A stretch of 63,802 nucleotides of DNA, the filler included, from Octopus bimaculoides (lineage: Eukaryota), in NCBI RefSeq assembly GCF_001194135.2. It is 6 parts of 6 records of this genome, joined end to end, with 100 filler letters (N's around TTAATTAATTAA, not from the genome) between each part and the next. Parts side by side here need not be neighbours in the genome. Positions count along the whole stretch, not along the records: positions 39,371 to 62,583 come from NC_068995.1; 5 more parts are not named here. One strand, 5' to 3'. Within the stretch, counting starts at the first letter, position 1. The number at the start of each line of letters is the position of its first letter. The translations under genes and the position numbers were made by a program. The notes beneath the pieces are model-generated. The model had not been told where the DNA came from and did no database searches. It worked only from the letters and a program-made list of their open reading frames with translations. This document shows positions 40,219-61,457 of this stretch, in pieces.

Positions 40219-42179
40219 TATAATATGTTATTGATTAATGAAAGTGTTTATGTTGTTTTTTAATTAGGTTGTAGGTAAATAGATTATGACCAAGGACGTT
40301 CCATCCATGATAATCCAACTATTTTCTGGCATTGTGCATCAAGGAGTGTATTATGCAATGTACTCCCTTTGTTTAACAGTAGGGTCTGTTTTGAAAGATG
40401 TTTTTGTTTGAAGGCCCCAAGTTACTCTGCTGGCTAACCCCCCCCCCCCCCAAAGGAATGTGTATCATATACAATGCAAGGACACATGAAAAATATCTCG
40501 TGTATCACATATGATACACAGGACAGGTAAAGTGCTAATTCCACATATTATCATTTCTGTAATTGACAAGAATTCTCAAAATATCAGTTCTTTTTATTAT
40601 TTCATTTTCTAAGGAATTGCTTTCGATTAGATGCAAATAATCGATTTTCTTCAAATTGCCTTTCCCTCGCAATATTCATCTTAATGTCTCCGAAGGATGA
40701 AAGAATGAAAGTTGAATTCGATATATTGTCAGTGTTCAGGCATTATGTGCTTGTATGGGTGTATGTGTATATATTGCCTGTGTTCAGGTATTATGTGCTT
40801 GTGTGGGTGTGGGAGTGTGCATGATGGTATGTGTGGTGTGTGTACTGAGTTAAATAGTGTGTGGGGCTGCTCGTATAGTGGTATGTGTGGTAACGCTATT
40901 GAAGATGGTGTGTGGACAATGGTGTGTTAAGTGAGTAATGAGTTGAACAGTGTGTATGGGTGTTTGTATAGTGGTGTGTGTGTGGTGAGGGTACCGAGAT
41001 AGTCGTTATGCAGGTGTGTGGGTGGAGGGTGGCAGTTGANNNNNNNNNNNNNNNNNNNNNNNNNNNNNNNNNNNNNNNNNNNNNNNNNNNNNNNNNNNNN
41101 NNNNNNNNNNNNNNNNNNNNNNNNNNNNNNNNNNNNNNNNNNNNNNNNNNNNNNNNNNNNNNNNNNNNNNNNNNNNNNNNNNNNNNNNNNNNNNNNNNNN
41201 NNNNNNNNNNNNNNNNNNNNNNNNNNNNNNNNNNNNNNNNNNNNNNNNNNNNNNNNNNNNNNNNNNNNNNNNNNNNNNNNNNNNNNNNNNNNNNNNNNNN
41301 NNNNNNNNNNNNNNNNNNNNNNNNNNNNNNNNNNNNNNNNNNNNNNNNNNNNNNNNNNNNNNNNNNNNNNNNNNNNNNNNNNNNNNNNNNNNNNNNNNNN
41401 NNNNNNNNNNNNNNNNNNNNNNNNNNNNNNNNNNNNNNNNNNNNNNNNNNNNNNNNNNNNNNNNNNNNNNNNNNNNNNNNNNNNNNNNNNNNNNNNNNNN
41501 NNNNNNNNNNNNNNNNNNNNNNNNNNNNNNNNNNNNNNNNNNNNNNNNNNNNNNNNNNNNNNNNNNNNNNNNNNNNNNNNNNNNNNNNNNNNNNNNNNNN
41601 NNNNNNNNNNNNNNNNNNNNNNNNNNNNNNNNNNNNNNNNNNNNNNNNNNNNNNNNNNNNNNNNNNNNNNNNNNNNNNNNNNNNNNNNNNNNNNNNNNNN
41701 NNNNNNNNNNNNNNNNNNNNNNNNNNNNNNNNNNNNNNNNNNNNNNNNNNNNNNNNNNNNNNNNNNNNNNNNNNNNNNNNNNNNNNNNNNNNNNNNNNNN
41801 NNNNNCCTGTATCAAATTTCTTGTATCAAATTTGTTCTTGTATCAAAATGACGTTCGTTACTTTTCTTCGTTTAATTTCCGACCAACAAACCTTATACAA
41901 TATGCATGGTACTGCATGATACATTTTAAGAATGGATTAATAAATATCAAATATACCAGGCTTTAAAAATGTATTCATTTTATTAACTAGTTCTTTACTT
42001 ATGGTTTATTTCATAGTTAATGTTTCAAGTACACATTTAGGCGGTTTGCAGAAAGCTGGAAAATCCACAAATCCAGGCTTCTTCCGGTCCCAAGCCTGCA
42101 GGTACTGTGTGTGTGTGAGAGTGTGTACGTGTTACAAGGTAAAAACATCAAAAGAAAAATACATGCAAATATAGTTATC

Positions 42180-42265: not shown

Positions 42266-42356
42266 TCAGTACTGGTTATTCTTTTGGGTGCCTTTTGTTC
42301 CCTCTTCAAACATTGGATTGTTAAAATAAAGTTGCCTTTCTGCAGATGGATTTGAT
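42266..42356 (-). CDS. Shisa-like/STMC6 membrane protein, coding exon 4 (cytoplasmic tail and stop)
   Basis: tcctgttgtgttttacag|a (phase 2), then SNPSAERQLYFNNPMFEEGTKGTQKNNQY*. Confidence 0.8.
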
Positions 42357-43120
42357 CTGTAAAACACAACAGGATAACATTCAAAATACATGTATGCATG
42401 GAATATAGTGAAAAAATACGGGATGTAAATTATGGTTGGGTGTTACGATATATTCATGCTAATGGAGCTTCGGGTTTAGTCCCACTGCGTGGCATCTTGG
42501 GCAAGTGTCTTCTACTATAGCCTCGGGCCGACCAAAGCCTTGTGAGTTGATTTGGTAACGGAAACTGAAAGANNNNNNNNNNATATATGTATGTATGTAT
42601 GTATGTGGGGGTGTGTGTGTGTTTGTGTGTCTGTGTTTGTCCCCCCAACATGACTTATAAAAAACATTTAACGGACTTATATTTTTTCATGATATTTTTA
42701 CCTCACAACGTTTTTGATGCAAATTTTTGTTGCATGGGACCAAAACTATGAAATTCCTCATACTTTCTTCTATCATTGAATCTAAGATAAATATATAATT
42801 TGTTTTTTTTAAACTTGATTGGAAGCGTTACTTACTCTCCTACAACGTTGCTTCAAATTTTGACGCAAACTTTTTTCTACTGAACCAAATCTCAATTTTT
42901 TTTAATGCCAAAATCTAGCTAGGGACCATTCCTTTTCAATTTTGTTAAGAACTGAATTAGTGACAAAGCTCTGAAGATGCTGCATGTGAGTAAGTTGCGG
43001 CCCTAAGAATATTATTCAACTACTACCGTAGTTGAATGATATACACACACAATGATATATACACACATACTCACACATATGCATTTAGCATAAATAGCAC
43101 AAAATATGACATATACGTAC

Positions 43121-43252
43121 TTTTTGCATAAATAGTTCTTCAATGGTTGCTTTAGACTGCAATAGTTGACATCTTTGAAAAAGTAGAAACAAAGTATAAC
43201 TACAACACCAACGACAATGAAAATATAAACCCAGAGTTCAAACTGGTTTTTG
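43121..43252 (-). CDS. Shisa-like/STMC6 membrane protein, coding exon 3 (transmembrane helix)
   Basis: ttctttcttctttttttcgcag|c ... aa|gtacgt; KNQFELWVYIFIVVGVVVILCFYFFKDVNYCSLKQPLKNYLCK; phases 2/2 fit both neighbours. Confidence 0.85.
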
Positions 43253-43319
43253 CTGCGAAAAAAAGAAGAAAGAACAATTAGGCGTACAGTATAACATTTA
43301 ATATGGTTCTTTATATATG

Positions 43320-43610
43320 TTGGCACTCCGTCGCTTACGACGACGAGGGTTCCAGCTGATCCGATCAACAGAACAGCCTGCTCGTGAAATTAACGTGCAA
43401 GTGGCTGAGCACTCCACAGACACGTGTAGCCTTAACGTAGTTCTCGGGAATATTCAGCGTGACACAGTGTGACAAGGCTGGCCCTTTGAAATACAGGTAC
43501 AACAGAAACAGGAAGAAAGAATGAGAGAAAGTTGTGGTGGAAGAGTACAGCAGGGTTCGCCACCATCCCCTGCCGGAGCCTCGTGGAGCTTTAGGTGTTT
43601 TCGCTCAATT
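43320..43610 (+). mobile_element. Interspersed repeat (RTE-like 3' tail family); second copy at ~60110-60290
   Basis: ggcactccgtcg...gagggttcca.ttgatccgatcaac.gaacagcctgct.gtgaaattaacgtgcaagtggctgag..tccacagacac shared by both loci. Confidence 0.75.
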
Positions 43611-44404
43611 AAAGGAAAAAATTATGTAAGGTGGGTTGGCAGAATCGTTAACGCGTCGGACAAAATGTCTTGCAGTATTTCATCCAACTCCTTCTGTTTT
43701 GAGGTCAATCGCGCAGAGGGTAGTTCTACCTTTTCTTCTTTTCGGGGGTTCGATGAAATATGCAGCTATCGAATATTAGAGTCGATGTAATCCTTGACCT
43801 TTCGCCAAAATAAGGAACGGTTAAAAAGTAAAAAAGAACAAAAGGGCAGTGAACGGAAGAGTCATTAGCACGCTGGACAAAATGTTTAGCGGCATTGCCT
43901 ATGACTTTGCGTTCAAATTCCACCGAAGTCAATTGTACCTTCCATCCTTTCTGGTTCGATAAGATAAGCACCAGTTGAACATTAGGGTCGACGTAGTCGA
44001 CTACCCTCTACCCACAAAATTTCAGGCTTTGTGCCAAAGACAGAAATATTATTGTTCACATACATACACACAGAACGGGACAAAATTGCTTTCGGGCCCC
44101 GGAAAGCGCTGTCCTCTCAAAATTCAAGTAGGCTGAGCGTGTTTTACTTTCTTCTTTTAGGGAAGTTTCCCGCAAACACATACACATATGTACCCACACT
44201 ACGTACCACACTTAATCTCATAAAATATTCTACAATATATATCGAATGTATGATATAACTGGGACAACAAATATGAGGGTTGCACATTTACGGGACGTTT
44301 GCGGGCATCTACCTGCGTGGCATAAATCTGCTTGACCAAAATTGGTCTGGAGATAATGTACTCGGACCCCATTCGAAACATTTAATGCGAACTGAATAAC
44401 TTAC

Positions 44405-44552
44405 AGGTCTTCGGTAGTCTTTTCTTCACAACAAGTATATTCTACACCTCCTTCAGGTTGGCAGCAACGTGGTTTTTCTGGCTCAGGACAATAGTAAACA
44501 TTAGGAGGGCGGTCGCCCAGTTCCTTGACCTTCTGACATTTCACCCCTTTGT
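44405..44552 (-). CDS. Shisa-like/STMC6 membrane protein, coding exon 2 (six-cysteine ectodomain)
   Basis: atatttcag|ac ... ct|gtaagt; KGVKCQKVKELGDRPPNVYYCPEPEKPRCCQPEGGVEYTCCEEKTTED; C-x15-C-x7-CC-x9-CC. Confidence 0.85.
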
Positions 44553-46064
44553 CTGAAATATATGAGATCCTTTCAGGTTTATTCATATAAAGGAGCATAT
44601 TTCAAAGGTACATTCACACACATTGACACATATACAATAACATACTCAAACATGCAATATCTCCGACAAAAAAGACCGCATAAGATATCGATACATTGTT
44701 AAATGTTTCGATACATTTAACAAAGATCTTAATGTAGGTAGAACGCCGACTTTCTGGATACTGATGAACTAAAGCCTTTTATAATCCACAAGCAAGAACT
44801 TCAAATTTCCGCAGCTGCCAGACTAGTTTGCTGACACCTTTCACAGTACAGTATTAACGAGTAGCAAGGTTCCTTCTCGAGTTACATAGACGCATAAGGC
44901 CGGTTTCTCTGGTGTATATATACTCTCCACCTGGATGGGACACCTGCCCGTTGCAGGATTACTCATTTTAACCAGCTGAGTGTACTGGAGCAACGTGGAA
45001 TGAAGTGTTTTACTCAAGAAGTGTTTTGCTTCGTCCGGTCCAGGAATCGAAACCATAACCTTACGATCCTGAGTCCAAGACCCTAAACACTAAACCACGC
45101 GCCTTCACAAGTATTAATAAACATTTATAATAACGTATAGGTACCTGTATTTCATTTAATTATTTAAGTAAATTCAATATTTGTTTAACTTACTAATTTA
45201 CGTACAGGTAGAGTGTATTTAACTTGACACAAGGTGAAGGTGAGGGCTGATTCGCTGTATGCAAATGAGTTCATTACTGGGCTCCGGAACTCTCGTAGGA
45301 AAAAAAATTCGCAGGTGGGACGCCGGTCTGTCGCAAGATTGCACATTTTTACCAGCTAAGTGGACTGGAGCAACATGAAATGAACTGTTTTCCTCAAGAA
45401 CATAACACATCGCTCGGGCCAGGAATCGAAACCTCAATCTTACGATCATGAGTTCATCGCCCCTAACCACTAAGCCAGGCGCCCTTATTAGTATCAATAT
45501 AGGATGAGGGTGAGGACCAAGAAGAGTAATGAGCGTTGAAGTCAACGAGGACGATGTTTCACGAGTAACGAAGTGACGTAAGTATTCTCGATGTCAGAAA
45601 AAATATCGAAACATTTTGTTGGTGGTTGGAGGAATTCAGAGAGTGCTAGAGGGAGTAGATATATTTGGAGGAAAAAGAAAGTGAGAAGTTTTTGTTGTTG
45701 ATATCTAAATGACAAAGCTGAATGATGGGGGTGACCAGAATCTTCATATGTACAGACACTATCTTTTGAAGCGAAGGTTGAAGAAAGCTCAACAAGTGTC
45801 TCCTTTGGTGGTGTGATCCGATCGAGATTCTTACTACTATTTTTAGCAGACTGAATGACCACATATAGATTCCATCGGTTTGTAGGTATTACTCACAGTA
45901 GATCGAGCGAATGTGAAAGCGGAGTTGTAACAAGTCGAAACGTGTTTGAGTGTTTGATTCAAAGCAGTCGAAGCAAAGCAGCGAAGAGTAAACAAAGGCG
46001 CGCGCGATAGAGGATGTCCTATCGCTGATATAGGTTTATGTATTGTATACGAAGGCGAAGTGGA

Positions 46065-46282
46065 GGCGCGTGGCTTAGTGGTTAGGGTGTCAGCATCATG
46101 ATCGTAAGATTGTGGTTTCGATTCCTGGATCGGGCAACGCGTTGTGTTCTTGAGCAAAACACTTCATTGCACTTTGCTCCAGTCCACTCAGCTGCCAAAA
46201 ATGAGTAACGCTGCGATGGACTGGCGTCCCGTCCAGAAAGGGAACGCATGCGCCATTGAAACTGGGAAACCGGGCCCATGAG
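46065..46282 (+). mobile_element. tRNA-derived SINE (family D); other copies at ~15010-15090, 26280-26510, 44860-45105, 45310-45480, 60280-60420
   Basis: gcgtggcttagtggttagggtg...tcgtaagattgtggtttcgattcctgg...gtgttcttgagcaaaacacttcattgcactttgctccagtccactcagctg; box A/box B-like head. Confidence 0.85.
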
Positions 46283-47190
46283 NNNNNNNNNNNNNNNNNN
46301 NNNNNNNNNNNNNNNNNNNNNNNNNNNNNNNNNNNNNNNNNNNNNNNNNNNNNNNNNNNNNNNNNNNNNNNNNNNNNNNNNNNNNNNNNNNNNNNNNNNN
46401 NNNNNNNNNNNNNNNNNNNNNNNNNNNNNNNNNNNNNNNNNNNNNNNNNNNNNNNNNNNNNNNNNNNNNNNNNNNNNNNNNNNNNNNNNNNNNNNNNNNN
46501 NNNNNNNNNNNNNNNNNNNNNNNNNNNNNNNNNNNNNNNNNNNNNNNNNNNNNNNNNNNNNNNNNNNNNNNNNNNNNNNNNNNNNNNNNNNNNNNNNNNN
46601 NNNNNNNNNNNNNNNNNNNNNNNNNNNNNNNNNNNNNNNNNNNNNNNNNNNNNNNNNNNNNNNNNNNNNNNNNNNNNNNNNNNNNNNNNNNNNNNNNNNN
46701 NNNNNNNNNNNNNNNNNNNNNNNNNNNNNNNNNNNNNNNNNNNNNNNNNNNNNNNNNNNNNNNNNNNNNNNNNNNNNNNNNNNNNNNNNNNNNNNNNNNN
46801 NNNNNNNNNNNNNNNNNNNNNNNNNNNNNNNNNNNNNNNNNNNNNNNNNNNNNNNNNNNNNNNNNNNNNNNNNNNNNNNNNNNNNNNNNNNNNNNNNNNN
46901 NNNNNNNNNNNNNNNNNNNNNNNNNNNNNNNNNNNNNNNNNNNNNNNNNNNNNNNNNNNNNNNNNNNNNNNNNNNNNNNNNNNNNNNNNNNNNNNNNNNN
47001 NNNNNNNNNNNNNNNNNNNNNNNNNNNNNNNNNNNNNNNNNNNNNNNNNNNNNNNNNNNNNNNNNNNNNNNNNNNNNNNNNNNNNNNNNNNNNNNNNNNN
47101 NNNNNNNNNNNNNNNNNNNNNNNNNNNNNNNNNNNNNNNNNNNNNNNNNNNNNNNNNNNNNNNNNNNNNNNNNNNNNNNNNNNNNNNNNN

Positions 47191-47226
<36 letters not shown>

Positions 47227-47436
47227 GGGATAAAAATCCAAATTTACAGGTAAAAACTCAATTAAGTTCAATTTATCAAAAATTAAAATTAAATTAAGTT
47301 TCACAGTATATAATATATAAATATATAATTTAGAGAAAAGAACCAAAGTTCATGAACTCATCCATGAAAATCCACAATTACATACAGAGAAAATTAATAA
47401 GTAAATACACAATAAAGAAGTATAAAATACAAAGTA

Positions 47437-47488
<52 letters not shown>

Positions 47489-48999
47489 TAAATGAAAGAC
47501 GGAAGATGGAATATACTAGAATTTATTATTAATCACGACAATTGTTTCGACTCGTCTAGCATCGATGATTTATGGTGCTTTAGTCACATATTTGACAAAA
47601 TTCTTCTTCTCCAATCAATAATAAAACAAGAAAAACAAAAGAAAAGTAAACCCACAAAATGGCGTATCAACCCGATTACTACGGAACGAAAATCGGTCAT
47701 GTCCATCTAAAATTTGATTATTGTTAACTGTGATAAGCGGTTTACCTCATGCTTTGAAAAAAATTAAAAACTCTCCTTATTCTGCAATAAGCTGAGACGT
47801 CCATCAGTGATACTTTTTACGGACATTTTCTCAGGTCTTTCTTAATTTTTCACATATTTAATCAAATATCTCATTACATAGTAAGAATCAGATATTTTTA
47901 GTGGTGGGTATGAAAACCGTATTTCCTGCGGGAGATATTGAAAAAAATATTGCAGAAGCAGAAAATATCAATTTTATTTTTTGGTGGATAATTAACATAA
48001 TTACAGGAGTGATCATGAAATTTAATTACGTAGTCAAAGCGTTAATTAATCTGAAACAGCTCTGAAGATGACGAGGAGTATTATAGGAGCGTGTAAAATC
48101 TTCCTTATAAAAGATTTTGAATATCAAAATCATTTGGAAACGTTTAGGCTCTAATGAAGTGGCTCAAAACAGTCCACAGAATTTTATGGGGCAGGGATAC
48201 ATGCTCTCATTCGAAGGTGGAACATTGCTATTGAAATAAATGGTGACTATGTTGAGAGGTAGGGATGTGATCCACAGAGGACTAGCTTTATTTCGATGTA
48301 TGATACATGTTCCTGTGTTGGTGATTATACCTGTCCTAAACAAAATGGCGTTACTTTTTGACTCACCCTCGTATTTATGTCTGAATAAAGAAAATACTCA
48401 CCCGAAACTTCGGCTCCAATGGCAAAGTTTATAGAGAGTAAAACACAAAGATATATCTGAAGCTGTAAACTAACCATTCTGCGTGGTTTAGTCTATCGCC
48501 TCTGAAAATCATCCATGTACTGTAAGTAGAGAAAAAAATGTATCGTTTTAGAAAAGTCAGTTGAGTTTTGTGTAAATTGTGGAGACAAGTGAGCTGAAAT
48601 TGTGCTGATTTTGAAACCAGGGCAAAGGAATTCGTTTAAACGATGAAACTAGGAGCCTAAAGCACCATCTATATTCACTCAATTAGCTCTCAGTTAGCTA
48701 GGAGCCATTGGCAAACTGTTTATTAGGAGTATGGGAACCAAAGCGGGATCCCTATAATCAACTAGATAAATTGTTTGACTGGATATCAGATCAAATTGTG
48801 TAGGTAAAGTGTACTTAGTAAATTAAATGAACACCACCGTTACATTACTGTTATTTCCTCTTGTCTGCCAGACACCCAGCTTTCTTTTTTGCGCATTTAA
48901 TGCATAGAAAGAATATGTTGATATTTTTAGCGAAATCCCAGCTGTGATTTGAACCACAGCTCTCAGATTTTCCCAGTTCAGAACCGCTAACTAATATAG

Positions 49000-49590
49000 T
49001 ATATCCATAAAAGGAAAAGTGTTACCATAAACGGTGGTTGACTTATAGCTGAAACGGCAATCTTCAAAGAACTTGTCCGAAAATATTATCAACCGAAGAT
49101 ACACGATGTTGTAGCTAGGACACTGTAAAATGAAATAACCCAGAGGCCAAAGATATAAGAATCTAAAGTATGATAGAAGCCATAGCCACTAAATAATAAA
49201 AAAAAAATACTGGTGGAATGTCCCAGTGAAAACCACAATAAAATGTAAACATAATAGACCTGACATAGTAATTTGGGATAGAGAAGAGAAACTGCGTAGA
49301 GTTGTGGAAATCAGCTGTCAAGCGGATGTTGACATAAGGCTAAAGATCAGCGAAAAAGAAAATACCTACGCTGAACTATTGAGGAATCTACAGCTAGTCT
49401 TTCTAGATTACAAGTTCAGGTTTGTACTTATAATTATTGGGGTACTAGGATATGTAACACACTGCCTAAATACCAATCCTGAGAAATTAGGCTTCTCAGA
49501 ACCAGAAAGGTGAAAGCTGATTCGAAGATTACAGATCCATGCCATCACTGGAACTGTTGTAATATGTAAAATTTCCTAGAAGTTTATCAT
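49000..49590 (+). mobile_element. Truncated RLE-type (R4/NeSL-like) non-LTR retrotransposon C-terminus, different subfamily from 28984
   Basis: ..HDVVARTL.. upstream, then WWNVPVKTTIKCKHNRPDIVIWDREEK...VEISCQAD...KENTYAELLRNLQ...IIIGVLG. Confidence 0.75.
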
Positions 49591-49981
49591 TTAAGTATAT
49601 ATGAGTATGTCTAGACAGTCAGGTGTAAGCATGAAAATACATACATAAAACAAAACATACAAATCTACACACATACATACATACATACCTACATAATACA
49701 TACATACATAATACATACATACATACATACAAACATACATACATAATACATACATACATAATGCATACATACATACATACGTAAATACATGCAAAATATC
49801 TTGTTGAAATTCCAATGATGGAGTCTTGGATCTAGGTTAGAAACTGGCTCTTTCTCTATTGGCAAGAATTCTTAAAATAATACTGATAATGACACACACA
49901 CACACATACATACATACACACACAAATACACATACAAATACACACACATTACACACATGCACATATAAACGTACGTGTGTG

Positions 49982-50036
<55 letters not shown>

Positions 50037-50061
50037 ATAGATATATCTATATCTATATTTA

Positions 50062-50112
<51 letters not shown>

Positions 50113-50959
50113 ATATATATATGTATATACACACACACCTACACACCCACGTAGACAGACACATACCAATAAGAATGCTAATTACCTTAAAATCAGGTTG
50201 TATATATAACAATACCTCCAGTGTGTGTATATACCAGAGCTATGCAGATAGTTGTGAACACCAAGAGACAATTGACAATATAATAAAGTTTACCTGCAAC
50301 CTACATATTTGTTTTTTCTTTTTTTTTTTATTATACGTTAAGCTTTTTTTTAATTATTTTTGTGTCATCAGCCGACGGAAACAGTATCAATCAATGTCTT
50401 TTTTTTGTTGTTGTTTTTCTTTTGTTCTTGTTCTTTTTTATTGCCATAACAACAACTGGTTTCAAGTCCATCCGAGCATTCCCACCTCCTACCGTCAGAT
50501 CATCCCCGTCCTCCACACCCACCACCCTCCACTGCCGCCGCAACCACCATCACCATCACCATCACCGCCGCTCTTTGGGTGATTATCGAAACCAATCAAT
50601 CACCTGCTCGTTCGGTCTAATGTAGGTGGTGGCTATTGAGAAACATGAGCCTTAATTACTGCTACTGTCGTCATGGTCGTTGTCATCATCCTTGCTGTGG
50701 TTGTTGTCATCGTTGTCGCTTTTGTTATTTTTGTAGTTACTCATGCAGCTGTTTCTTTTTATATCTGTAGATGTCGCTCTTGTTGTTGTTGTTGTTGTTG
50801 TTCTTCTTCTTCTTCTTCTTCTTCTTCTTCTTCTTCTTCTTTGATTCCTGAGCTTCTCAGCCACTGTCGGAACATTGCACTGTCTATTTCTTTTCTGTTT
50901 AGTTTAACCCAGTATTTGCGATGAAGGGGCTTTTCTTGCCATCTTTTTATCATGATCCG

Positions 50960-51520
50960 TTGTTGTTCCAGTTTTAGTTTGGATTTCAGTTGTTTTACAG
51001 CTTTTGTTGTTTCTTCTTTTTCTTCATAGTTGTTAGCTACTATGACTTCTTGTATTTGTCAGCTTCCTTAAAAACTGAAATCGGTTTTTTGTTTTGTTCG
51101 TGTTTTGTGGTTATTTGTATTAGCTTTACTTGCTTCTGAAATAGGTATTTCTGTAGTCCTATGGTGGTTACTTTGTTATAGTTTTATAGCTGTATAAGAC
51201 CTCTACCACCTTCCATACGTTGTATATATAACATTTCTATGCCAGATTTTGTGTGGTGCATCCTAAATCCTGTCATTATTTTTCTTGTTTCTCTGTCTAT
51301 TTTGATTAATTCATTTAGAGTCCAGTTAAGGATATTGTAGCTGTAACTTATAACTGGGACGGCTAGAGTGTTGATACCTATTATCTTGTTTTTAGCATTG
51401 AGCTCTCTTTTCAGTACTAATATAACTCGTCTTCTCTTTCATTTGTGTGTGTTGTATCGTAACTAATTCATTGATCCCTAAGTATTTGTATGTCTGGTTT
51501 TAGTATAATTCTCTTATTTC
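50960..51520 (-). mobile_element. R4/Dong-type RT C-terminal fragment
   Basis: Minus strand reads LKRELNAKNKIIGINTLAVPVISYSYNILNWTLNELIKIDRETRKIMTGFRMHHTKSGIERLYIQRMEGGRGLIQL, with the characteristic RLY..R..GGRGL motif. Confidence 0.85.
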
Positions 51521-52246
51521 ATTTGCTTTATCTAGTGTGACGTTGCTACTTAAGAGTAGCAACACCACACTAGTTTTCCTCTTTACAAGGTTGCTTTGGC
51601 ACATTTTTGTAAGCCAAATTTCATGTTTATTTATTTGGTAGATCCATATACTGTCTCTAGTAATGTTTCCCGAGTGAGAAAGCAGTGCATACCATCAAAG
51701 TGACACTGGGGTAAAATATACGAAGCCCAGTATACCCATCATGACTACCCGTCTGTTAAGGGTACAACAGGCACATGCATCACAACCATATGTGCGCGAC
51801 ATGGTGATCTCATATTAAGATAAACAGCGCATGACCTACCAGGTGGGCCCAGTTAGAATTTTCTTCAGGTCGAGTAGCCCATCCCGCACAAAAGGTTCCG
51901 AATAAGGTTTGTTTAAGGATGTTGAACGAAGCACCCATATTTCCAAAGGTGAATTATTCAAACCCCAAAGAATTCTTCTCAACACATAGCTATGATGCTT
52001 CCCCACTACTTCTGCTTGCAATCAGAGATGCACATATCGTCAGCCACCATGAGGGATATGCTCAACTGGTTAAGGTCAAACAGCTGACAAGCACATCTGT
52101 GCTATTGAGCAGAATATTTGCTGTAGCCCATCTTTTATACCAAGACAAAACAATGTACATGATAACACTTCTAATCAGTTAAGATCAGAAGCCACGGGAA
52201 CCAGTGTCTGGAACTGCACCAGGACATATTATTATTATTATTATTA

Positions 52247-52293
<47 letters not shown>

Positions 52294-54011
52294 GTCATTA
52301 TTATTATTATCATTGTTTTTATTGTTGTTGATGTTGTTGTTCTTACTATTATTGATGTAATTCTCGTTTCTATCGCTACACGAAGAAAAATATGACAGCT
52401 GTTTCTAGCAGGTTCAATAACCTTATAGAAGCTGCCCCGTTGGCGTGCTATTGTTCGAACATTCATCATCATTGTTGCTCTTGTTCATATTGATGTAAGT
52501 CTCGTTTCTGCTGCTGCTATCGATTCTGTTACTAAGTGTATATTTCAATTGATTGTTTTATTTATTCATTTTAAACACTTATTTATCATTACTTGCCATA
52601 GATCAGCTTTCCAACGAGGGGACCATTGATTTACTTCGTATCTGTTGAAACAATAAGATCTTTAGATGCAGGTTAGCATGCAGTTTACGGCCATAAAACA
52701 GTCAAAGTAAATTTTCCTAAAAATACTGAAAGTAAATTGCGATAGGAACCGGAAATAATGACAGTGACAGCACGTTATTTCATGTACACAATTAATGTGA
52801 CATAACCAATGTACAGAGCATATATATATTTAATATTTTTTTCTAATCTAGGCACAAGGCCCGAAATTTTGGGGAGGGGGGGTTAGTCGATTAGATCGAC
52901 CCCAGTACGCAACTGGTACTTAATTAATTTATCAACCCCGAAAAGATGAAAGGCAAAGTTGACCTCGGCGGAATTTGAACTCAGAACGTAAAGACAGACG
53001 AAATACCGCTAAGCATTTTGCCCGGCGTGCTAACGTTTCTTATTTCTTTATTGCCCACAAGGGGCTGAACATAGAGAGGACAAACAAAGTATGGGCCTGC
53101 AGAGATAATATTAAAGAAAACTCATGGAATGTTCTCGTTAAAACTTCTGTAAAATCTAATCATAACAAACTGTAGGAGGAATATTTGGCAGGAATATTCC
53201 TCCTGCTACTCAGCATCGATGACGAAGACGACGACGGCTGAGGTCATGACACAGCTTAATCCAGGTAGCTGCCAGAATCTACACCACTCATGGCTACTGT
53301 TCTTATTGACATGCAAACTCTCATACAAAATGTCGACCTGCCATCACTATGGCTTCATATATTTTTTTCTATCGCCACCAATCGGGAATGTCTTATCGTT
53401 TACAAGACCAGACATAGTGAAAATCAGTTGTGCAGCAGATGGTAAGTTAATGGTAAGTCAATGGTAAGTTAAAAAGAATGCTTCAATGACGTACTAACGA
53501 GAAATTTGCGATACAACACCGGGATATAACTTTGAGTGAATGTTTGAAATTATTGGAGTATCTGGCTAGTAATTGACTTAGTAACAGTCTTGAGAAACTA
53601 GAATTTGTAATATTGGGAAGCATAAGTGTATATGTATGCGTGTATGCCTGTATAGCATAATCAACTTGTGTTGGGAGTTACACCGCGCTGATTACCAAAA
53701 TGCATGAAATACTGGTTCTTGGGTTAACAGGACCACAAAAAAAAGAAGAAAAAAAAGGATTCTATTTTGTAAAGAAAAAATAAATGAAATTAAAATTAAA
53801 AGAAAAGAAAAAATTTAAAGATGTTTAAGGTAAGAATTAAATACACAGGGTCTTCAAACTTGTCTGAAAAGAGATTCTTCTGCCTCTGATGACATATTTC
53901 CTGCCAAGGGCAAACCATTTGTTTCAACAGTTACAGTTGTTTTTTTAAAGTCTATTCGCAATAACTGACAGAGAATAGTGTGGCGAGATATAAAAGAACA
54001 AAGGTTCTTAC

Positions 54012-54057
54012 TCATCACGGAGGATAGCATAACAAGAAATAGCAGCCAATAATCCAT
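54012..54057 (-). CDS. Shisa-like/STMC6 membrane protein, coding exon 1 (signal peptide); whole exon 54012-54065
   Basis: gtcctttttgttcctctcag|ttgcaaatATG...MDYWLLFLVMLSSVM a|gtaaga; phase 1 donor matches the phase 1 acceptor at 44553. Confidence 0.7.
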
Positions 54058-54166
54058 ATTTGCAACTGAGAGGAACAAAAAAGGACATGCTGACTAGTTC
54101 GTGGCAATCAAAATCAATCACATTAAATGTAGATAAACCAAAGGACATTTTTGTAAAACAGAGCTA

Positions 54167-54227
<61 letters not shown>

Positions 54228-54788
54228 TTCTGTTATCTTCTGATACCTGAAGGCGTGGTAGGCGTTTTCCTATGACATAACGAATGCATAATCTATAAAC
54301 TGCATAGCCACAGAAACATATTAAATACAAATTGAACTGGTATCGTCCAGTAAATATGCATGTGTGTGTGTCTATGTGCCTATATGTGCGTGTAGATACA
54401 TGGCAGTAATTTGTGTTTATGTTTATCTAAGTGTATTATATTATATGTGTATTTATATGGATGCAACTTGTTATTTAAACGCTTTCCTCAGAAAGATGCT
54501 TTTCATATGATGGCTCTGATGAAGCTGCAAAATATTGCATTGACAGTCAATTCTGAGTGCACGGCTCCTTACAACTAAAACATCTGTAAGCTAATGAATG
54601 TGATTACGTAACTCATATTATTTCATCAAATTCTTTTATTAATTAATATCACGTTGTATATTGACCTTTTTGGATCATATAAAAGTCCGGCGACGTGGAC
54701 GCCAGAGAATGTCCACTCCTTGCTACCGGAGCTTGGTAGGGTGTGCATTATAGGGATAAGTGCATCGAGTACTGTTATGGCAAAGTGG

Positions 54789-54831
<43 letters not shown>

Positions 54832-55154
54832 CACGCATGCATACATACACAGACACACACACACATATGCACGCACATAGATACAAAAACACACATGCAC
54901 GCATGCACAAACACATATATCTTTGTCTCTGTGTGTATGAGTATGTACGCATGTATGTAATATACATAATATATATATATATANNNNNNNNNNNNNNNNN
55001 NNNNNNNNNNNNNNNNNNNNNNNNNNNNNNNNNNNNNNNNNNNNNNNNNNNNNNNNNNNNNNNNNNNNNNNNNNNNNNNNNNNNNNNNNNNNNNNNNNNN
55101 NNNNNNNNNNNNNNNNNNNNNNNNNNNNNNNNNNNNNNNNNNNNNNNNNNNNNN

Positions 55155-55331: not shown

Positions 55332-57479
55332 TTATGAATATATTTTTGTTTTCAAAATGCGTGATGATTCAGTCATTATTTGATCAAGACTAATAGCTTG
55401 TGTATTCTGTAACTTTAACCAACGTATAGCCTTATCTACAATTAAATCCCATTCACTCTTTTGTGAAGTTAATTTTTCTGTCAAGAAAACAACTGCAAGA
55501 GCTGTGGCCCAGACATTATCGTGTACGGATGGTTTTCTCTGTTTAAGTTGATCGAGGGATTCTTTCAAAACGGTTGCTAAAAACTCATTTAGTTCCCAAT
55601 ATCCAGAAAAGTTTTGTAGGAGAAGCAATGACTTAAGTCTGTCTTTACTTTCGAAATTGAATTTTGTGTTATCAATTTTCCTAAGTTCTTGGAATTTTTC
55701 TGCATCAAATTTTTTTGACATCGTCTCACGAGCTGTAACACTCACTTTGTAAGATTTCTCGGCCCCAATAAAACTTGTGTACCTTGAAACCAAGTTAGCA
55801 AGCGTAGCCAAGTCAATAATCTCGGATTTTATATTATCACCTTTACCCAAATCTTCTTTTAATTCCAGTTCCTGTATTTTCCTTCTCACACAAAGACGGT
55901 GTATCTGCATTTCTTTATCACACTGGTTCAACACATTTGTTTCGAAGTCAAGTGAAAAATCTGATTCACCGACTTTACCAGAAAGATTGAGTCTAACTCT
56001 CTGGCAAGTCGACTCAAGTTTCTGAAAAACTAGATAAACAATTAGTGATTCTTCGGTGAAAATACACGGAATATTTTCTGGAACTGTAATGTAGGATAAT
56101 TCTTTATTGCTTTCAGCATCTTTGGCAGATATACGAACTGAAGATACAAATGGTTGCATTGACAATTTTAATAGACGCATAACTTTTGCCTTAAGGTTGT
56201 CATTTGTCATCACAAACTCTGCTCGGCCTCTTCCCGCACGGGCGATACCTTTGACCAATTCTGTAGAAACTCCAGAACCTACACCGATCGTGAAATATCG
56301 AGTGTTATAAGCTTGTGACTTAACCGACTGAATTATTTCGTTCGTATTGTAGACTTCTCCATCCGTTATCAGGAATACTTGGCGATAAAGCCCATGAGAA
56401 GATCGTTTATCAGAGAGTGATTTAATAGCACTGAGCATTTCAGTTCCACCAGCTGCATAAAGATTGTTATGGAATTTCAATGCTTCATTTAGAGAATCTT
56501 CATTATATTCTCTGCTTCCATCCTTGAACAAGACTTCTAAGTAATTATTAAAGGATATAAGGTTAAATGAACAACCCAACGGTAGACTTTTCAAGAAAAG
56601 TAACAAAGTGTCTTTTGCTGCTTCAATTTTCTCTCCATTCATGCTTCCTGAGTGGTCAATGATAAAAATGTAGTCATTAAGTTGAGGAGCCTTCACTTGG
56701 GGAAGTTTAGGAAATAAATTTATCATCATAATATCTTTAGAAAGCATTCCTCTAGCATTTCCATCACCTTTCTCCATAATCACTTGTGGTTTCTCTACTT
56801 CATCATAGTACACAAGGAAAAGAATGTCTTTCTCAAAATTAAACTTCTCTGTCAATCTCACAGTAGCATGACACTTATTTTCCTGATATTCCATCTTCAT
56901 TGGCTGTTCAGACTTTACGTCTTTGATTTGTGATTTCCATTTGATGGTGGCGTTAAAACTAAACTCTCTTGGTTTTGGTGCTTTTTGATAATGTTCGTCT
57001 TTAGGAATAATGCCATATCTGGGATTAAGAACAAACGGCATATAGAACTTCACAGCTCCATCAGCTTCACAGGAAAGCTCAGAAACAAGGCATATTTGTA
57101 AATGGATCTTTTGCTTCGGTGGAATATTACCCAAATTATATTCAAAAATATCACCAGACGTGCTGGTCTCTCGCAACAAAATGGCTGACATCCCCTTTTC
57201 TACAGCTTCTTTGTACTCTTTCTGGGCGACATTTTTGTCTTTAGATTTGGCAACTATATGGACATCACCAATTTTAGCTTCGAATCTATATACGGCACTG
57301 TCCTCTTCCACAGGGAAAACAAACTTAGCTTCTGTCTTGTGTTGGCTTTCATTTATATATTCAGCCTCGATGTTGACGTGTGCAGTAAATCCGTTGATGG
57401 AAACATTGTGTGTAGCGTAGAGAAGAGAAACATCTGTTTTCTTTTCACAAATAATTCCAAATACAATCACCTGCGCCAT
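55332..57479 (-). CDS. VWA5A: von Willebrand factor A domain-containing protein 5A-like (VIT + VWA + conserved C-terminal helical domain), 715 aa, single coding exon
   Basis: Uninterrupted ORF. VIT domain (EAKFVFPVEEDSAVYRFEAKIGD..YNLGNIPP), VWA with intact MIDAS (FIIDHSGSM, GGTEM, LITDGE), C-terminal LQNFSGYW / WATALAVVFL / EWDLIVDKAIRWL. Acceptor ttttgttttatag| at 57493 lies 13 nt before the ATG, so the ORF-track start (57503) is intronic. Confidence 0.92.
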   Translation of the reverse strand: MAQVIVFGIICEKKTDVSLLYATHNVSINGFTAHVNIEAEYINESQHKTEAKFVFPVEEDSAVYRFEAKIGDVHIVAKSKDKNVAQKEYKEAVEKGMSAILLRETSTSGDIFEYNLGNIPPKQKIHLQICLVSELSCEADGAVKFYMPFVLNPRYGIIPKDEHYQKAPKPREFSFNATIKWKSQIKDVKSEQPMKMEYQENKCHATVRLTEKFNFEKDILFLVYYDEVEKPQVIMEKGDGNARGMLSKDIMMINLFPKLPQVKAPQLNDYIFIIDHSGSMNGEKIEAAKDTLLLFLKSLPLGCSFNLISFNNYLEVLFKDGSREYNEDSLNEALKFHNNLYAAGGTEMLSAIKSLSDKRSSHGLYRQVFLITDGEVYNTNEIIQSVKSQAYNTRYFTIGVGSGVSTELVKGIARAGRGRAEFVMTNDNLKAKVMRLLKLSMQPFVSSVRISAKDAESNKELSYITVPENIPCIFTEESLIVYLVFQKLESTCQRVRLNLSGKVGESDFSLDFETNVLNQCDKEMQIHRLCVRRKIQELELKEDLGKGDNIKSEIIDLATLANLVSRYTSFIGAEKSYKVSVTARETMSKKFDAEKFQELRKIDNTKFNFESKDRLKSLLLLQNFSGYWELNEFLATVLKESLDQLKQRKPSVHDNVWATALAVVFLTEKLTSQKSEWDLIVDKAIRWLKLQNTQAISLDQIMTESSRILKTKIYS

Positions 57480-57841
57480 TTCTTTAGAGTTTCTATAAAA
57501 CAAAAAGATGATACATTAAATAGACATTTTATCAATTTAAAATTAATCAAATAAGTATCTCTTGTTTAATAATATATAACAAAGTGAAATTTAAACAATT
57601 ACCTTTCTAATAAGGAGGACTTTGTTGATAATAAGATAATAACAGTTTCAAATTTTGGCACAAGGCCAGCAATTTCAGGTAAGGGGTAAGTCGATTACAT
57701 CGACCCCTGATATTTGTTTCACTGAGACTGAAAGGATGAAAAGCTAAGTCGATCTCTGCGGAATCTGAACTCAGAACGTCAAGACGGACGAATTGCTCCG
57801 AAACATTTTGCCTGACGTGCTGACGATTCTGCCAGAACGCC

Positions 57842-57931
<90 letters not shown>

Positions 57932-58423
57932 ATCTAAGTCTGCATCATACAGATGCTCATTTCATGTCTGTAGAAATGGTTATAGATTAGTTTATTCGAA
58001 AGACGGCACCAACTTAAAATGGTAGTTTTTATGGCCATATTGAGTGCAGGGATCAATAATTCTTAACCAAACTTCAAGTGATTGTTGAAGGGGTTTATGT
58101 TCATGGTAAATTTTGTTGCGATCTTTGATGTGTTTTGTGTGTGTGTATTTGTGTGTGCGTATGTGTGTGTCTGTGTGTGTTGATGTCTGTTTTTGTATGC
58201 GTGTGTGTGCATGTTTATGCATGTGTGTATGTGAGTGTGCGCATGTTTGTGTGCGTGTGTATGTGTTTGTGCGTGTGAATGTCTGTGTGCGTATGTGACT
58301 GTGTGTTTTGTGTGTGCATGTTTGTATGCGTGCGTATGTGTGTATGTGTTTGTGCGTGTGCATGTTTGTGTAAGTGTGTATGTGTTTGCGTGTTTTGTGT
58401 GTGCATGTTTGTGTATGTATGTT

Positions 58424-58461
<38 letters not shown>

Positions 58462-59769
58462 CGATGTCTTACATATATGGTAGACTACTAAACTGAGAAC
58501 CATTTAATTCCTAGATATACCAAATAAAAAAAGAATATAGGATTTTTTTAAACATCGAATGGCTACGAGGGCCCTCCCGAGCAAAAGAGGAATCAAAAGG
58601 GGTCCACAGGCAAAAATGGTTGAAAACCAAGGGAATAGACGTTAATAGTTGCGTGATTTTAGTAAAAGTTACATACTCCAAACTAATTAATAAGTAGCTT
58701 TCATTTTTATAGTATGGACTAAGGCGCTAACCTGGCAGAATCATTAGTACGTGGGGCAAAATGTCTAGCGGTATTTCGTCTGCCGCAACGTTCTGAGTTC
58801 AAATTCCATCGAAGTCGACGTCGCTTTTCATTCTTTTCGGGGTCAATAAATTAAGTGCCAGTGAAACACTGGGGCTCAAGAAAATCGTCTATCCGCCAAA
58901 TTTTAGGCCTTGTGCTTATAGTACAAAGTATTATTATATATAGATTTTTCTGGACAGGTCTAACTTTGATAATTGCTTTCTTTTAGTAAACGTTACATCT
59001 TCCAAACTAATTAGTGAGCACCTTTCTTTATTACAGGATGTTCTGGTTAAATTTGACTATTTTTATGTATCTTTTATGTTTCTCAGCAACAGCTTGAGGT
59101 ATTGGTGAACAGTCAACGGCATTAAAAAAGCATAAAGAATAAAGTTGTAGTTGACAAATAGCTGACATGGAAGTCTGGAAGCCATCTGAATATTCTTTTC
59201 TACTCTAGGCACAAGGCCCGTAATTTTGGGGTAGGGAGCCAGGCGATTAGATCGACCCAGTATGCAACTGGTACTTAATTTATCGACCCTGAAAAGATGA
59301 AAGGCAAAGTCGGCCTCGGTGGAATTTGAACTCAGAACGAAAAGACAGACGAAATACCGCTAAGCATTTCGCCCGGCGTGCTAACGTTTCTGCCAGCTCA
59401 ACGCCTTGGAAGCCATCTGAATATTCTTTTCTACTCTAGTCACAAGGCATGAAATTTTTGGGGAGCGCAGCCAATCGATTAGATTGACCCCAGTACGCAA
59501 CTGGTACTTAATTTATCGACCCCGAAAAGATGAAAGGCAAAGTCGACCTAGGTGGAATTTGAACTCAGAACGTAAAGACAGACGATATATCGTGCTAATG
59601 TTTCTGCCAGCTCGCTGCCTTGGAAGCCATTTGAATATTAGAAAAGTGTTACCTGTAGCATAATAATTCGCACCGGATGTTAAAATGCCGATATCATGGC
59701 TGCTGGTCTATGCTTTATGAACACTGTTAAATCTGTAAGACATGATGTGGACAACAGGAAAACCAAGTT

Positions 59770-61324: not shown

Positions 61325-61392
<68 letters not shown>

Positions 61393-61421
61393 TACACATA
61401 TATATATATATGTATATATAA

Positions 61422-61457
<36 letters not shown>

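What the first reader, a model, noticed from the sequence alone, without database searches (positions are those of the whole stretch)
42266..54057. Hidden 138-aa Shisa-like (STMC6) single-pass membrane protein absent as a unit from the ORF track
Four exons join through canonical GT-AG introns (9459, 1152 and 764 nt) with matching phases 1/2/2 to give MDYWLLFLVMLSSVMNKGVKCQKVKELGDRPPNVYYCPEPEKPRCCQPEGGVEYTCCEEKTTEDLKNQFELWVYIFIVVGVVVILCFYFFKDVNYCSLKQPLKNYLCKKSNPSAERQLYFNNPMFEEGTKGTQKNNQY* (seen). Signal peptide + C*C*CC*CC + TM is the STMC6 architecture shared by Shisa-like, WBP1/VOPP1, CYYR1, TMEM92 and CX proteins, which act as membrane adaptors (established). I do not recognise a specific ortholog, so it may be a mollusc/cephalopod-specific member (inference).
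Basis: partly seen in the sequence, partly recalled or inferred. Interest (0 to 1): 0.7.

Follow-up and report, generated by a model that had tools for sequence, protein, structure and literature searches.

The report
Octopus six-cysteine single-pass membrane protein gene

Summary
The piece is identical to Octopus bimaculoides CM046615.1. Both N gaps lie inside introns.

RefSeq LOC106875063 (148 aa) starts at 48477-48402 (MVSLQLQIYLCVLLSINFAIGAEVS). That exon is conserved in O. sinensis, aligns with a more distant relative, and has the best donor of 980 GTs on that strand.

The protein belongs to an unnamed family: 47 representatives at E<1e-3. Every source name seen is 'uncharacterized' or similar, apart from two UniRef labels. 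Named members are molluscs, nemerteans and annelids, plus one weak crayfish hit. Core: C-x15-C-x7-CC-x7(-9)-CC, EQLxLW, transmembrane helix.

It shares the STMC6 layout (signal peptide, C*C*CC*CC, transmembrane helix). But it has no PPxY motif, no significant Pfam hit, hhalign probability 1.2% against WBP1/VOPP1, and no Foldseek match. Its tail carries YFNNPMF (YFDNPVY in the relative), so I infer endocytic sorting. The finding is ordinary, with a modestly interesting unnamed family.

The parts
48402..48477 (-). True first coding exon (76 nt, phase 1): MVSLQLQIYLCVLLSINFAIGAEVS plus the first base of Asp26. It is a signal peptide with an A-x-G cleavage-type site.
   Evidence: Together with exons 2-4 it gives exactly RefSeq P0001. 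The donor CGG|GTGAGT is the best of 980 GTs on this strand. The exon and its donor are conserved in O. sinensis at L001 10001-10076. The P0052 alignment starts inside it. AlphaFold predicts a helix at residues 4-21.
44405..44552 (-). Coding exon 2 (148 nt): the whole cysteine-rich ectodomain, DKGVKC...NVYYC...CC...YTCCEEKTTEDL. It holds C31, C47, C55, C56, C66 and C67.
   Evidence: Acceptor tttcag, donor GTAAGT. These columns are invariant or nearly invariant in 42 family members. pLDDT is 88-95, with four short strands.
43121..43252 (-). Coding exon 3 (132 nt): KNQFELW juxtamembrane motif, transmembrane helix WVYIFIVVGVVVILCFYFF, and basic cytosolic juxtamembrane segment KDVNYCSLKQPLKNYLCKK.
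   Evidence: Q78, L81 and W82 are nearly invariant. AlphaFold predicts a continuous helix at 70-103. Conserved in O. sinensis at L001 20552-20683.
42266..42356 (-). Coding exon 4 (91 nt including the TGA stop): cytosolic tail SNPSAERQLYFNNPMFEEGTKGTQKNNQY with an FxNPxF motif.
   Evidence: Part of RefSeq P0001. It aligns with the P0052 tail ...EEYYFDNPVYDN. The [FY][DNET]NP motif is found in 5 of 44 family tails against 0.24 expected.
54012..54057 (-). Not supported as a coding exon of this gene.
   Evidence: Weak donor TGA|GTAAGA at 3.4 bits, matched or beaten by 15% of GTs. The resulting 138-aa protein is absent from the 15-billion-protein collection. It shows no similarity to the N-termini of the orthologs. 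It lies about 1.3 kb downstream of the stop of the neighbouring VIT-VWA gene.
44553..48401 (-). Intron 1 of the supported model. The written length of 3849 nt includes the 908-N gap at 46283-47190, so the real length is unknown.
   Evidence: The orthologous O. sinensis intron is about 8.0 kb, gap-free and carries no extra coding exon.
42357..43120 (-). Intron 3 (764 nt as written), containing the 10-N gap at 42573-42582.
   Evidence: The exon 3/4 junction is supported by RefSeq P0001 and by the alignment with P0052.

Best explanation
The locus is the Octopus bimaculoides gene LOC106875063. It has four coding exons on the minus strand: 48477-48402, 44552-44405, 43252-43121 and 42356-42266. They encode a 148-aa type I membrane protein.

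Shown here:
- A cleavable-looking signal peptide.
- An acidic ectodomain of about 45 residues with six conserved cysteines, C-x15-C-x7-CC-x9-CC. The family norm for the last loop is x7.
- A confident prediction of four short beta-strands for that domain.
- A conserved EQLxLW-type juxtamembrane motif running straight into one transmembrane helix.
- A basic cytosolic juxtamembrane stretch with a cysteine conserved in many members.
- A short, poorly predicted tail of about 48 residues.
- Membership of an unnamed protein family. Its named members are molluscs, nemerteans and annelids, plus one weak crayfish hit.

Inferred:
- The six cysteines form three disulfides that make a small rigid extracellular or luminal knob.
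- The protein acts as a membrane adaptor or sorting partner for another membrane protein, in the manner proposed for STMC6 proteins.
- In cephalopods it does not recruit WW-domain ligases through PPxY. Instead the tail motif YFNNPMF (YFDNPVY in the nearest relative, identical to the LDL-receptor FDNPVY signal) is read by PTB-domain clathrin adaptors such as Dab2, ARH or Numb. This would drive endocytosis or endosomal sorting.
- The juxtamembrane cysteines may be palmitoylated.
For: Gene model:
- The CDS translates exactly to RefSeq P0001.
- The piece is identical to CM046615.1.
- The O. sinensis ortholog keeps exons 1-3 and their splice sites.
- Exon 1 has the best donor on the strand.
- P0052, from uninterrupted 1-1.2 kb contigs of ten sequencing-run assemblies, aligns over residues 10-141 at E 7e-40.

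Family:
- 47 representatives at E<1e-3 and 11 at E<1e-10.
- Invariant N43, Y45, C47, C55, C56, C66, C67; nearly invariant C31, Q78, L81, W82.
- Regular 15/7/7 cysteine spacing.
- Taxa.

Fold: mean pLDDT 75.8, ectodomain 88-95, strands at 29-32, 44-47, 54-56 and 65-67, helix at 70-103.

Topology: the sequence is acidic before the transmembrane helix and has five lysines after it (read directly from the sequence).

Tail motif: [FY][DNET]NP occurs in 5 of 44 tails against 0.24 expected, and 0 of 2000 shuffles reach that count. It is conserved between octopus and P0052. FxNPxY as a PTB/clathrin sorting signal is established knowledge from the LDL receptor.

STMC6-like layout: C*C*CC*CC directly after a signal sequence, then a transmembrane helix, as the class is described in PMC5578492 and PMC6125347.
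Against: - There is no experimental or expression evidence for the octopus gene in the data I could reach. The collection holds no contig other than the genome that encodes P0001.
- dN/dS between O. bimaculoides and O. sinensis over exons 1-3 is about 0.66 (8.5 synonymous and 22.5 non-synonymous differences). CDS identity is 91%, close to the intronic 89-92%. Recent constraint is therefore weak, or the sample is too small to tell.
- The tail motif was defined after looking at the data. It occurs in only a minority of family members, and some of those have Gly where PTB binding needs Tyr or Phe.
- Octopus has Phe, not Tyr, and the O. sinensis tail is unknown.
- The adaptor function is an analogy only. 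No sequence or fold link to any characterised protein was found.
Confidence: 0.55

Rival explanations
1. The reader's model is right, or is a genuine alternative isoform: transcription starts upstream and the exon 54057-54012 (MDYWLLFLVMLSSVM) splices directly to exon 2, giving a 138-aa protein.
For: The exon is an ATG-initiated hydrophobic stretch (9-residue hydropathy 2.5) ending at a GT in the correct phase. Alternative first exons are common, and I had no RNA data to exclude it.
Against: - The donor is weak: 3.4 bits, matched or beaten by 15% of GTs on the strand.
- It is one of 348 phase-compatible ATG...GT candidates.
- It has no small residues at -3/-1 for signal peptidase (read from the sequence).
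- The exact 138-aa product is absent from 15 billion predicted proteins.
- RefSeq, O. sinensis and P0052 all support the other exon.
- It sits only about 1.3 kb downstream of the VIT-VWA gene stop.
Confidence: 0.06
2. It is a true, very divergent homolog of the STMC6 superfamily (Shisa-like, WBP1/VOPP1, CX, CYYR1, TMEM92). It works as those proteins do, as a transmembrane adaptor that brings cytosolic partners to membrane cargo to control their trafficking and degradation. In relatives those partners are WW-domain NEDD4-type ligases.
For: - Same order of elements: signal peptide, C*C*CC*CC, (L/I)W-aromatic start of the transmembrane helix (octopus ELWVYIF, WBP1 ELWWFW, VOPP1 RLWYFW) and a short tail.
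- Among sub-threshold Pfam hits of 42 members, WBP-1 (2 members, best E 0.025) and CYYR1 (1 member, E 0.013) appear.
- UniRef labels P0030 'CX domain-containing protein' and Capitella P0039 'VOPP1'.
- Eight family tails carry PPLP and one carries PPFY.
Against: - hhalign of the family core against WBP1/VOPP1 gives probability 1.2%, aligning 4 columns.
- Family HMM scores on WBP1/VOPP1 are negative and no better than on reversed sequences.
- The Pfam hints are at chance level for 42 queries.
- No hit to Shisa_N, CX, DUF2650 or TMEM92 was returned for any member at E<=1, or at E<=10 for the members scanned individually.
- The octopus tail has no PPxY or PPLP.
- All three loops are about twice as long as in WBP1/VOPP1.
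- My WBP1/VOPP1 alignment was vertebrate-only (Neff 1.7), so the test had low power.
Confidence: 0.25
3. It is an independent, lineage-restricted family. Its small acidic disulfide-rich ectodomain is the business end. It could be an auxiliary subunit or co-receptor that binds a channel or receptor in the membrane (as Shisa9/CKAMP44 or TMIE do), or a binder of cations or basic ligands. The tail would be secondary.
For: - Conservation is concentrated in the ectodomain and the EQLxLW-transmembrane junction, while tails are highly variable in length (about 35-218 residues in full-length members) and sequence.
- The ectodomain is predicted confidently and matches no known fold.
- The only PDB sequence hint is the transmembrane region of TMIE, E 0.052, not significant.
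Against: No partner, expression or structural evidence. The TMIE similarity covers only a hydrophobic helix plus basic residues. The recurrent tail motifs (PPLP, [FY]xNP) argue that the tail does matter.
Confidence: 0.2
4. In octopus the gene is drifting toward loss of function. It would be a relic of a family that is functional in other molluscs.
For: - dN/dS is about 0.66, and CDS identity is about the same as intron identity between the two Octopus species.
- The octopus third loop is lengthened (x9 against x7) and the canonical ECCE/FTCCE acidic residues are partly replaced.
- No transcript-derived copy of the protein is in the collection.
Against: The open reading frame, all splice sites, all six cysteines and N43/Y45/Q78/L81/W82 are intact in both species. 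There are only 31 differences, so dN/dS has a wide error. The tail motif is shared with a 42%-identical relative.
Confidence: 0.08

Closest known systems
WBP1 / WBP1L / VOPP1 (Pfam WBP-1, PF11669; part of STMC6, Pei & Grishin 2012)
   Same: Both are type I single-pass proteins with six ectodomain cysteines in the order C*C*CC*CC, an (E/R)LW-aromatic motif at the entry to the transmembrane helix, and cytosolic cysteines after it. Compare octopus ...CCEEKTTEDLKNQFELWVYIF with WBP1 ...CCTYYYELWWFW. Weak Pfam WBP-1 hints: E 0.65-1.1 for octopus and 0.025 for Littorina P0014.
   Different: The loops are 15/7/9 (family 15/7/7) against 9/4/4 in WBP1 and 12/5/3 in VOPP1. There are 13 residues between the last CC and LW, against 5-8. 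The tail has no PPxY and is not proline-rich. There is no significant profile similarity. WBP1/VOPP1 bind WW domains of WWOX and NEDD4-type ligases (PMC6125347, PMC11399591), and the octopus tail has no site for that.
Shisa / Shisa-like proteins (Pfam Shisa_N)
   Same: A signal peptide, an N-terminal cysteine-rich domain and a single transmembrane helix. Proposed role as transmembrane adaptors controlling receptor maturation and trafficking (PMC5578492).
   Different: No Shisa_N hit was returned for any of the 42 family members at E<=1, or for the members scanned individually at E<=10. The long proline-rich C-terminal region with PY motifs is absent, and the protein is much shorter.
CX module proteins and CYYR1 (other STMC6 families)
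   Same: The cysteine pattern and single transmembrane helix. UniRef names P0030 a 'CX domain-containing protein'. One member gives CYYR1 at E 0.013.
   Different: My Pfam scan of P0030 did not return CX at E<=10. CYYR1 has three PPxY motifs and cysteines inside the transmembrane helix (PMC5578492), and neither is present here.
LDL-receptor-type FxNPxY sorting signal (a motif, not a family)
   Same: The octopus tail has YFNNPMF. The nearest relative P0052 has YFDNPVY, which contains the LDL-receptor hexapeptide FDNPVY.
   Different: This is a short linear motif and can arise by chance or convergence. Octopus has Phe at the Tyr position. Several family members have Gly there. Function was not tested.

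Membership tests
STMC6 (Shisa-like superfamily, Pei & Grishin 2012) | N-terminal signal sequence immediately before the cysteine-rich domain | tested here: met
   The RefSeq exon 1 gives MVSLQLQIYLCVLLSINFAIG|AEVSDKGVKC. It has a hydrophobic core, A-x-G at -3/-1, and an AlphaFold helix at 4-21. No SignalP was available, so this is a heuristic call.
STMC6 (Shisa-like superfamily, Pei & Grishin 2012) | Six conserved cysteines in the pattern C*C*CC*CC (as quoted in PMC5578492) | tested here: met
   C31, C47, C55, C56, C66 and C67 are invariant or nearly invariant in 42 members. Spacing is 15/7/7, and 15/7/9 in octopus. The pattern is short and could be convergent.
STMC6 (Shisa-like superfamily, Pei & Grishin 2012) | Single transmembrane helix soon after the Cys domain, with an aromatic motif at or in the helix | tested here: inconclusive
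   The transmembrane helix is present (WVYIFIVVGVVVILCFYFF; helix 70-103). L81-W82 are nearly invariant. Octopus has LWVYIF, with three aromatics, but the family consensus is LWGTVA with only Trp.
STMC6 (Shisa-like superfamily, Pei & Grishin 2012) | Proline-rich cytosolic region with PPxY (PY) motifs | tested here: not met
   The octopus tail has 3 prolines in 48 residues and no PPxY or PPLP. In the family, 1 of 44 has PPFY and about 8 have PPLP.
STMC6 (Shisa-like superfamily, Pei & Grishin 2012) | Detectable sequence or profile similarity to a recognised STMC6 family | tested here: not met
   Pfam best hits are WBP-1 at 0.025 and CYYR1 at 0.013 among 42 members, which is chance level. hhalign against WBP1/VOPP1 gives probability 1.2%. 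HMM scores equal those on reversed controls. The test had low power because the comparison alignment was vertebrate-only. UniRef names (CX, VOPP1) on two members are an unreproduced lead.
STMC6 (Shisa-like superfamily, Pei & Grishin 2012) | Same disulfide connectivity and fold of the ectodomain | not testable with these tools
   No solved STMC6 ectodomain turned up in the PDB searches.
Unnamed lophotrochozoan six-Cys transmembrane family (defined here: P0001-P0052 set) | Significant full-length sequence similarity and the core GN.Y.C...CC...(F)TCC...EQLxLW plus transmembrane helix | tested here: met
   phmmer E values of 3.6e-29 (P0003), 1.9e-17 and so on; 47 representatives. All invariant columns are present in the octopus protein.
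RefSeq gene LOC106875063 (O. bimaculoides) | Identical genomic sequence and identical protein product | tested here: met
   There are 0 mismatches over 19,107 nt to CM046615.1. The four-exon CDS translates to P0001 exactly.

The most novel reading that the evidence does not exclude
The octopus gene represents a previously unrecognised, lophotrochozoan-centred family of small type I membrane proteins. Its disulfide-rich ectodomain would be a new fold unrelated to Shisa/WBP1/VOPP1, so the C*C*CC*CC pattern would be convergent. Its cytosolic tails would have swapped sorting or adaptor motifs between lineages: FxNPxY/F in cephalopods, PPLP in gastropods. That would make it a modular membrane adaptor family with lineage-specific wiring.
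Probability: 0.3. Interest if true: 0.4.

Novelty: new member of a known kind. Interest (0 to 1): 0.22.

Why it matters
For genome annotation the lesson is practical. A plausible-looking upstream ATG, hydrophobic stretch and GT can be spliced in silico to a real gene by chance: there were 348 phase-compatible candidates here. Ortholog conservation and donor strength pick the right first exon.

Biologically, the gene gives a handle on an unnamed family that is conserved across molluscs, nemerteans and annelids. It is a small six-cysteine membrane protein with no significant Pfam match and no structural match in the PDB. If the STMC6 link is real, it extends that adaptor superfamily to a branch that has replaced PY motifs with NPxY/PPLP motifs. 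If the link is not real, the family has an ectodomain fold with no match in the PDB. Either outcome is of modest, specialist interest.

Tried and rejected
WBP-1 and CYYR1 appeared only at chance level.
- A profile search of all PDB sequences gave only a non-significant hit to the TMIE transmembrane region.
- AlphaFold model plus Foldseek against the PDB found no match; the best had E 7.8.
- The word-indexed profile search for names returned only 8 proteins, because transmembrane words saturated the candidate list.
The fetched locus starts at the equivalent of window position ~51160, 2.9 kb short of it, and no tool could extend it.
- I looked for exon 4 in O. sinensis; the contig ends first.
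- The Pei & Grishin paper (PMC3295595) is not held. The class definition was taken from papers that quote it.
- A literature search for LOC106875063 returned nothing.
- I considered a granulin-like half-module, which has the same C*C*CC*CC order, and rejected it. There was no Pfam Granulin hit and no Foldseek hit to granulin structures.

Full report
**Origin of the piece and state of the sequence**

The usable piece (39371-62583) has 37% G+C and contains N runs at 41040-41805, 42573-42582, 46283-47190 and 54984-55154. Its reverse complement is identical, at 0 mismatches over 19,107 nt and with the same N runs, to Octopus bimaculoides assembly GCA_001194135.2, record CM046615.1, around 7.10-7.13 Mb.

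**Checking the observation**

The exact exon limits are:

| Exon | Window coordinates (minus strand) |
|---|---|
| Exon 2 | 44552-44405 |
| Exon 3 | 43252-43121 |
| Exon 4 | 42356-42266 (TGA at 42268-42266) |

The introns are 9459, 1152 and 764 nt, in phases 1/2/2, all GT-AG. The acceptors follow pyrimidine tracts.

Both assembly gaps inside the finding lie in introns. The 10-N gap is between exons 3 and 4, and the 908-N gap is in the first intron. They affect intron length only. No exon appears to be hidden in them. The gap-free O. sinensis locus has no additional coding exon between exons 1 and 2. A 144-aa relative, P0052, aligns from residue 10 to 141 across all junctions, with only two short gaps before the third Cys pair and a 3-residue indel near the exon 3/4 junction. 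Physical continuity across the 10-N gap could not be checked, because the O. sinensis contig ends before exon 4.

**The first exon is different**

Both begin MVSL(Q/R)LQIYLCVLLSINFAIG..., not MDYW....

That N-terminus is encoded at 48477-48402 and ends at CGG|GTGAGT. Joined to exons 2-4 it reproduces P0001 exactly.

In O. sinensis the same exon, its ATG context and its GTGAGT donor are conserved.

A simple donor matrix ranks this donor first among the 980 GT dinucleotides on the strand between exon 2 and the end of the piece, at 11.6 bits.

The region holds 348 ATG...GT candidates in the right phase, so finding one with a hydrophobic peptide is not remarkable.

The alignment with P0052 starts inside the RefSeq signal peptide: LCVLLSINFAIGAE against LTTFLNMAFLVNAE.

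An alternative upstream exon cannot be excluded without RNA data, and I give it about 6%.

**What the protein is**

An exhaustive phmmer search with P0001 found 47 cluster representatives at E<1e-3. Eleven are below 1e-10, and the best outside Octopus is P0003/P0052 at 3.6e-29.

In a 42-sequence alignment, N43, Y45, C47, C55, C56, C66 and C67 are invariant. C31, Q78, L81 and W82 are nearly so.

The family core is [GT]KC.(K/R)N..(L/I)GDREGN(V/I)YYC.DP.KPECCE....FTCCE.....K.L.EQLQLWG followed by a hydrophobic helix and KD(V/I)N.C. The cysteine spacing is strikingly regular at 15/7/7. The cephalopod members have 8 or 9 residues in the last loop.

Every source name I could retrieve is 'uncharacterized', 'hypothetical' or similarly uninformative, with two UniRef exceptions noted below. 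The organisms are:

- Bivalves: Mercenaria, Ruditapes, Solemya, Dreissena, Potamilus, Argopecten, Mactra, Crassostrea, Sinanodonta, Mytilus.
- Gastropods: Haliotis, Gigantopelta, Littorina, Biomphalaria, Bulinus, Bradybaena, Candidula, Babylonia, Nucella, Lottia, Patella, Plakobranchus.
- Octopus.
- Nemerteans: Lineus, Tubulanus.
- Annelids: Owenia, Capitella.
- A weak crayfish hit (Procambarus, E 3.8e-4).

P0052 comes from uninterrupted 1-1.2 kb contigs in assemblies of ten sequencing runs (SRR276660xx). That fits spliced mRNA of an unidentified organism, presumably another cephalopod; this is inference.

**Structure and topology**

AlphaFold2 with the family alignment gives mean pLDDT 75.8. 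The ectodomain scores 88-95 and forms four short strands (29-32, 44-47, 54-56, 65-67). One continuous helix at 70-103 covers the EQLxLW motif and the membrane span. The tail scores low. The segment before the helix is acidic and the segment after it has five lysines, which fits an N-out type I topology; this is read directly from the sequence.

**Comparison with known families**

Its features are a signal sequence, six cysteines as C*C*CC*CC, a transmembrane helix with an aromatic motif, and PY motifs in a proline-rich tail. Its role is as an adaptor for WW-domain proteins and receptor trafficking.

The octopus protein meets the first two features and has the helix, with ELWVYIF resembling WBP1 ELWWFW. 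It fails on PY motifs: there is no PPxY and no PPLP.

Sequence tests were negative:

- No Pfam model is significant for the octopus protein, for any of 42 members, or for family consensus sequences. WBP-1 (best 0.025) and CYYR1 (0.013) are what 42 queries would give by chance.
- I retrieved authentic WBP1 and VOPP1 sequences (Pfam-tagged PF11669 / PF27963-4) and ran hhalign against the family core. The probability was 1.2% over 4 columns.
- The family HMM scores them no better than their reversed sequences.
- The PDB profile search and Foldseek found nothing.

On the other side, UniRef labels P0030 'CX domain-containing protein' and Capitella P0039 'Vesicular, overexpressed in cancer, prosurvival protein 1'. 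Both are STMC6 families. My Pfam scans did not reproduce either label, so they remain leads.

My comparison set was vertebrate-only and of low diversity, so the negative result has limited power. I put true STMC6 homology at roughly one in four, and say only that the protein has the STMC6 layout.

**How it most likely works**

Shown: a membrane-anchored, disulfide-rich, acidic knob of about 45 residues on a single helix, with a short cytosolic tail.

Inferred: three disulfides, and an adaptor or sorting role.

The one conserved feature of the cephalopod tail is YFNNPMF in octopus and YFDNPVY in P0052. The latter contains the LDL-receptor internalisation hexapeptide, which is established knowledge. 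Across the family, [FY][DNET]NP occurs in 5 of 44 tails against 0.24 expected from shuffling, and 0 of 2000 shuffles reach 5. This pattern was defined post hoc. Other lineages carry PPLP instead.

I therefore propose clathrin/PTB-adaptor-dependent endocytic sorting for the octopus protein. Other branches would use lineage-specific motifs. The juxtamembrane cysteines may be palmitoylated. This mechanism is inference with low to moderate confidence.

**Cautions**

Between the two Octopus species dN/dS over exons 1-3 is about 0.66, from 8.5 synonymous and 22.5 non-synonymous differences. Coding identity is 91%, about the same as intronic identity. Recent constraint is therefore weak, or simply unmeasurable with 31 differences. 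All family-invariant residues, the frame and the splice sites are intact in both species.

I found no transcript-derived copy of the octopus protein and no paper mentioning the locus.

**Verdict**

The finding is a real gene, already annotated as uncharacterized. The value added here is the corrected model, the delineation of an unnamed lophotrochozoan six-cysteine membrane-protein family, and a testable sorting-motif hypothesis. Interest is low to modest.

Noticed in passing
window 55332-57503 (-): An uninterrupted 723-aa ORF (from TTG; RefSeq aa from an internal ATG) encodes a VIT domain plus a von Willebrand A domain (VIT E 3.4e-28, VWA_3 1.8e-23). It looks like an intronless VWA5A/inter-alpha-trypsin-inhibitor-like gene, lying directly upstream of and on the same strand as the finding's gene.
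   Followed up: partly
window 59621-59189, 58936-58721, 57841-57646, 53087-52831, 44052-43865, 39853-39534: Copies of a short interspersed repeat of about 150-400 nt, in both orientations. They match many places (70-87% identity) in the O. sinensis locus L001, e.g. 13269-14672, 19309-19528 and 6284-6455. This is probably a SINE/MITE-type element common to both octopus genomes.
   Followed up: no
window 46283-47190 gap vs L001 12302-14712: The first intron is about 8.0 kb in O. sinensis but 3.85 kb as written in O. bimaculoides. The stretch spanning the 908-N gap (window 47482-46059) corresponds to 2.4 kb in O. sinensis, much of it copies of the repeat above. The estimated gap length is therefore probably too short.
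   Followed up: partly
window 48478-48525 (-): Just upstream of the true start codon there are pyrimidine-tract plus AG acceptor-like sites (tttttttctctacttacag|, and gattttcag|) and a 7-codon upstream ORF (ATGGATGATTTTCAGAGGCGATAG). The stretch is conserved in O. sinensis. This suggests the first coding exon may be preceded by an unannotated non-coding 5' exon.
   Followed up: no
window 49600-50200, 54100-54300, 54650-54980, 58000-58500, 61200-61450: Long (TG/CA)n, (TA)n and related microsatellites give rise to many spurious 'ORFs' rich in C/V/Y/I or H/T. They also account for most of the hydrophobic ATG...GT pseudo-exon candidates.
   Followed up: no
From memory it resembles the C-terminal tail of non-LTR retrotransposon ORF2 proteins. 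A Pfam scan gave no hit. The sequence 49710-49217 also matches L001 2063-1597 in inverted orientation.
   Followed up: partly
L006 24099-25019 (= outside the given piece, beyond window 39371): The next called gene downstream in the O. bimaculoides chromosome is a single-exon 306-aa mitochondrial carrier (Mito_carr).
   Followed up: no
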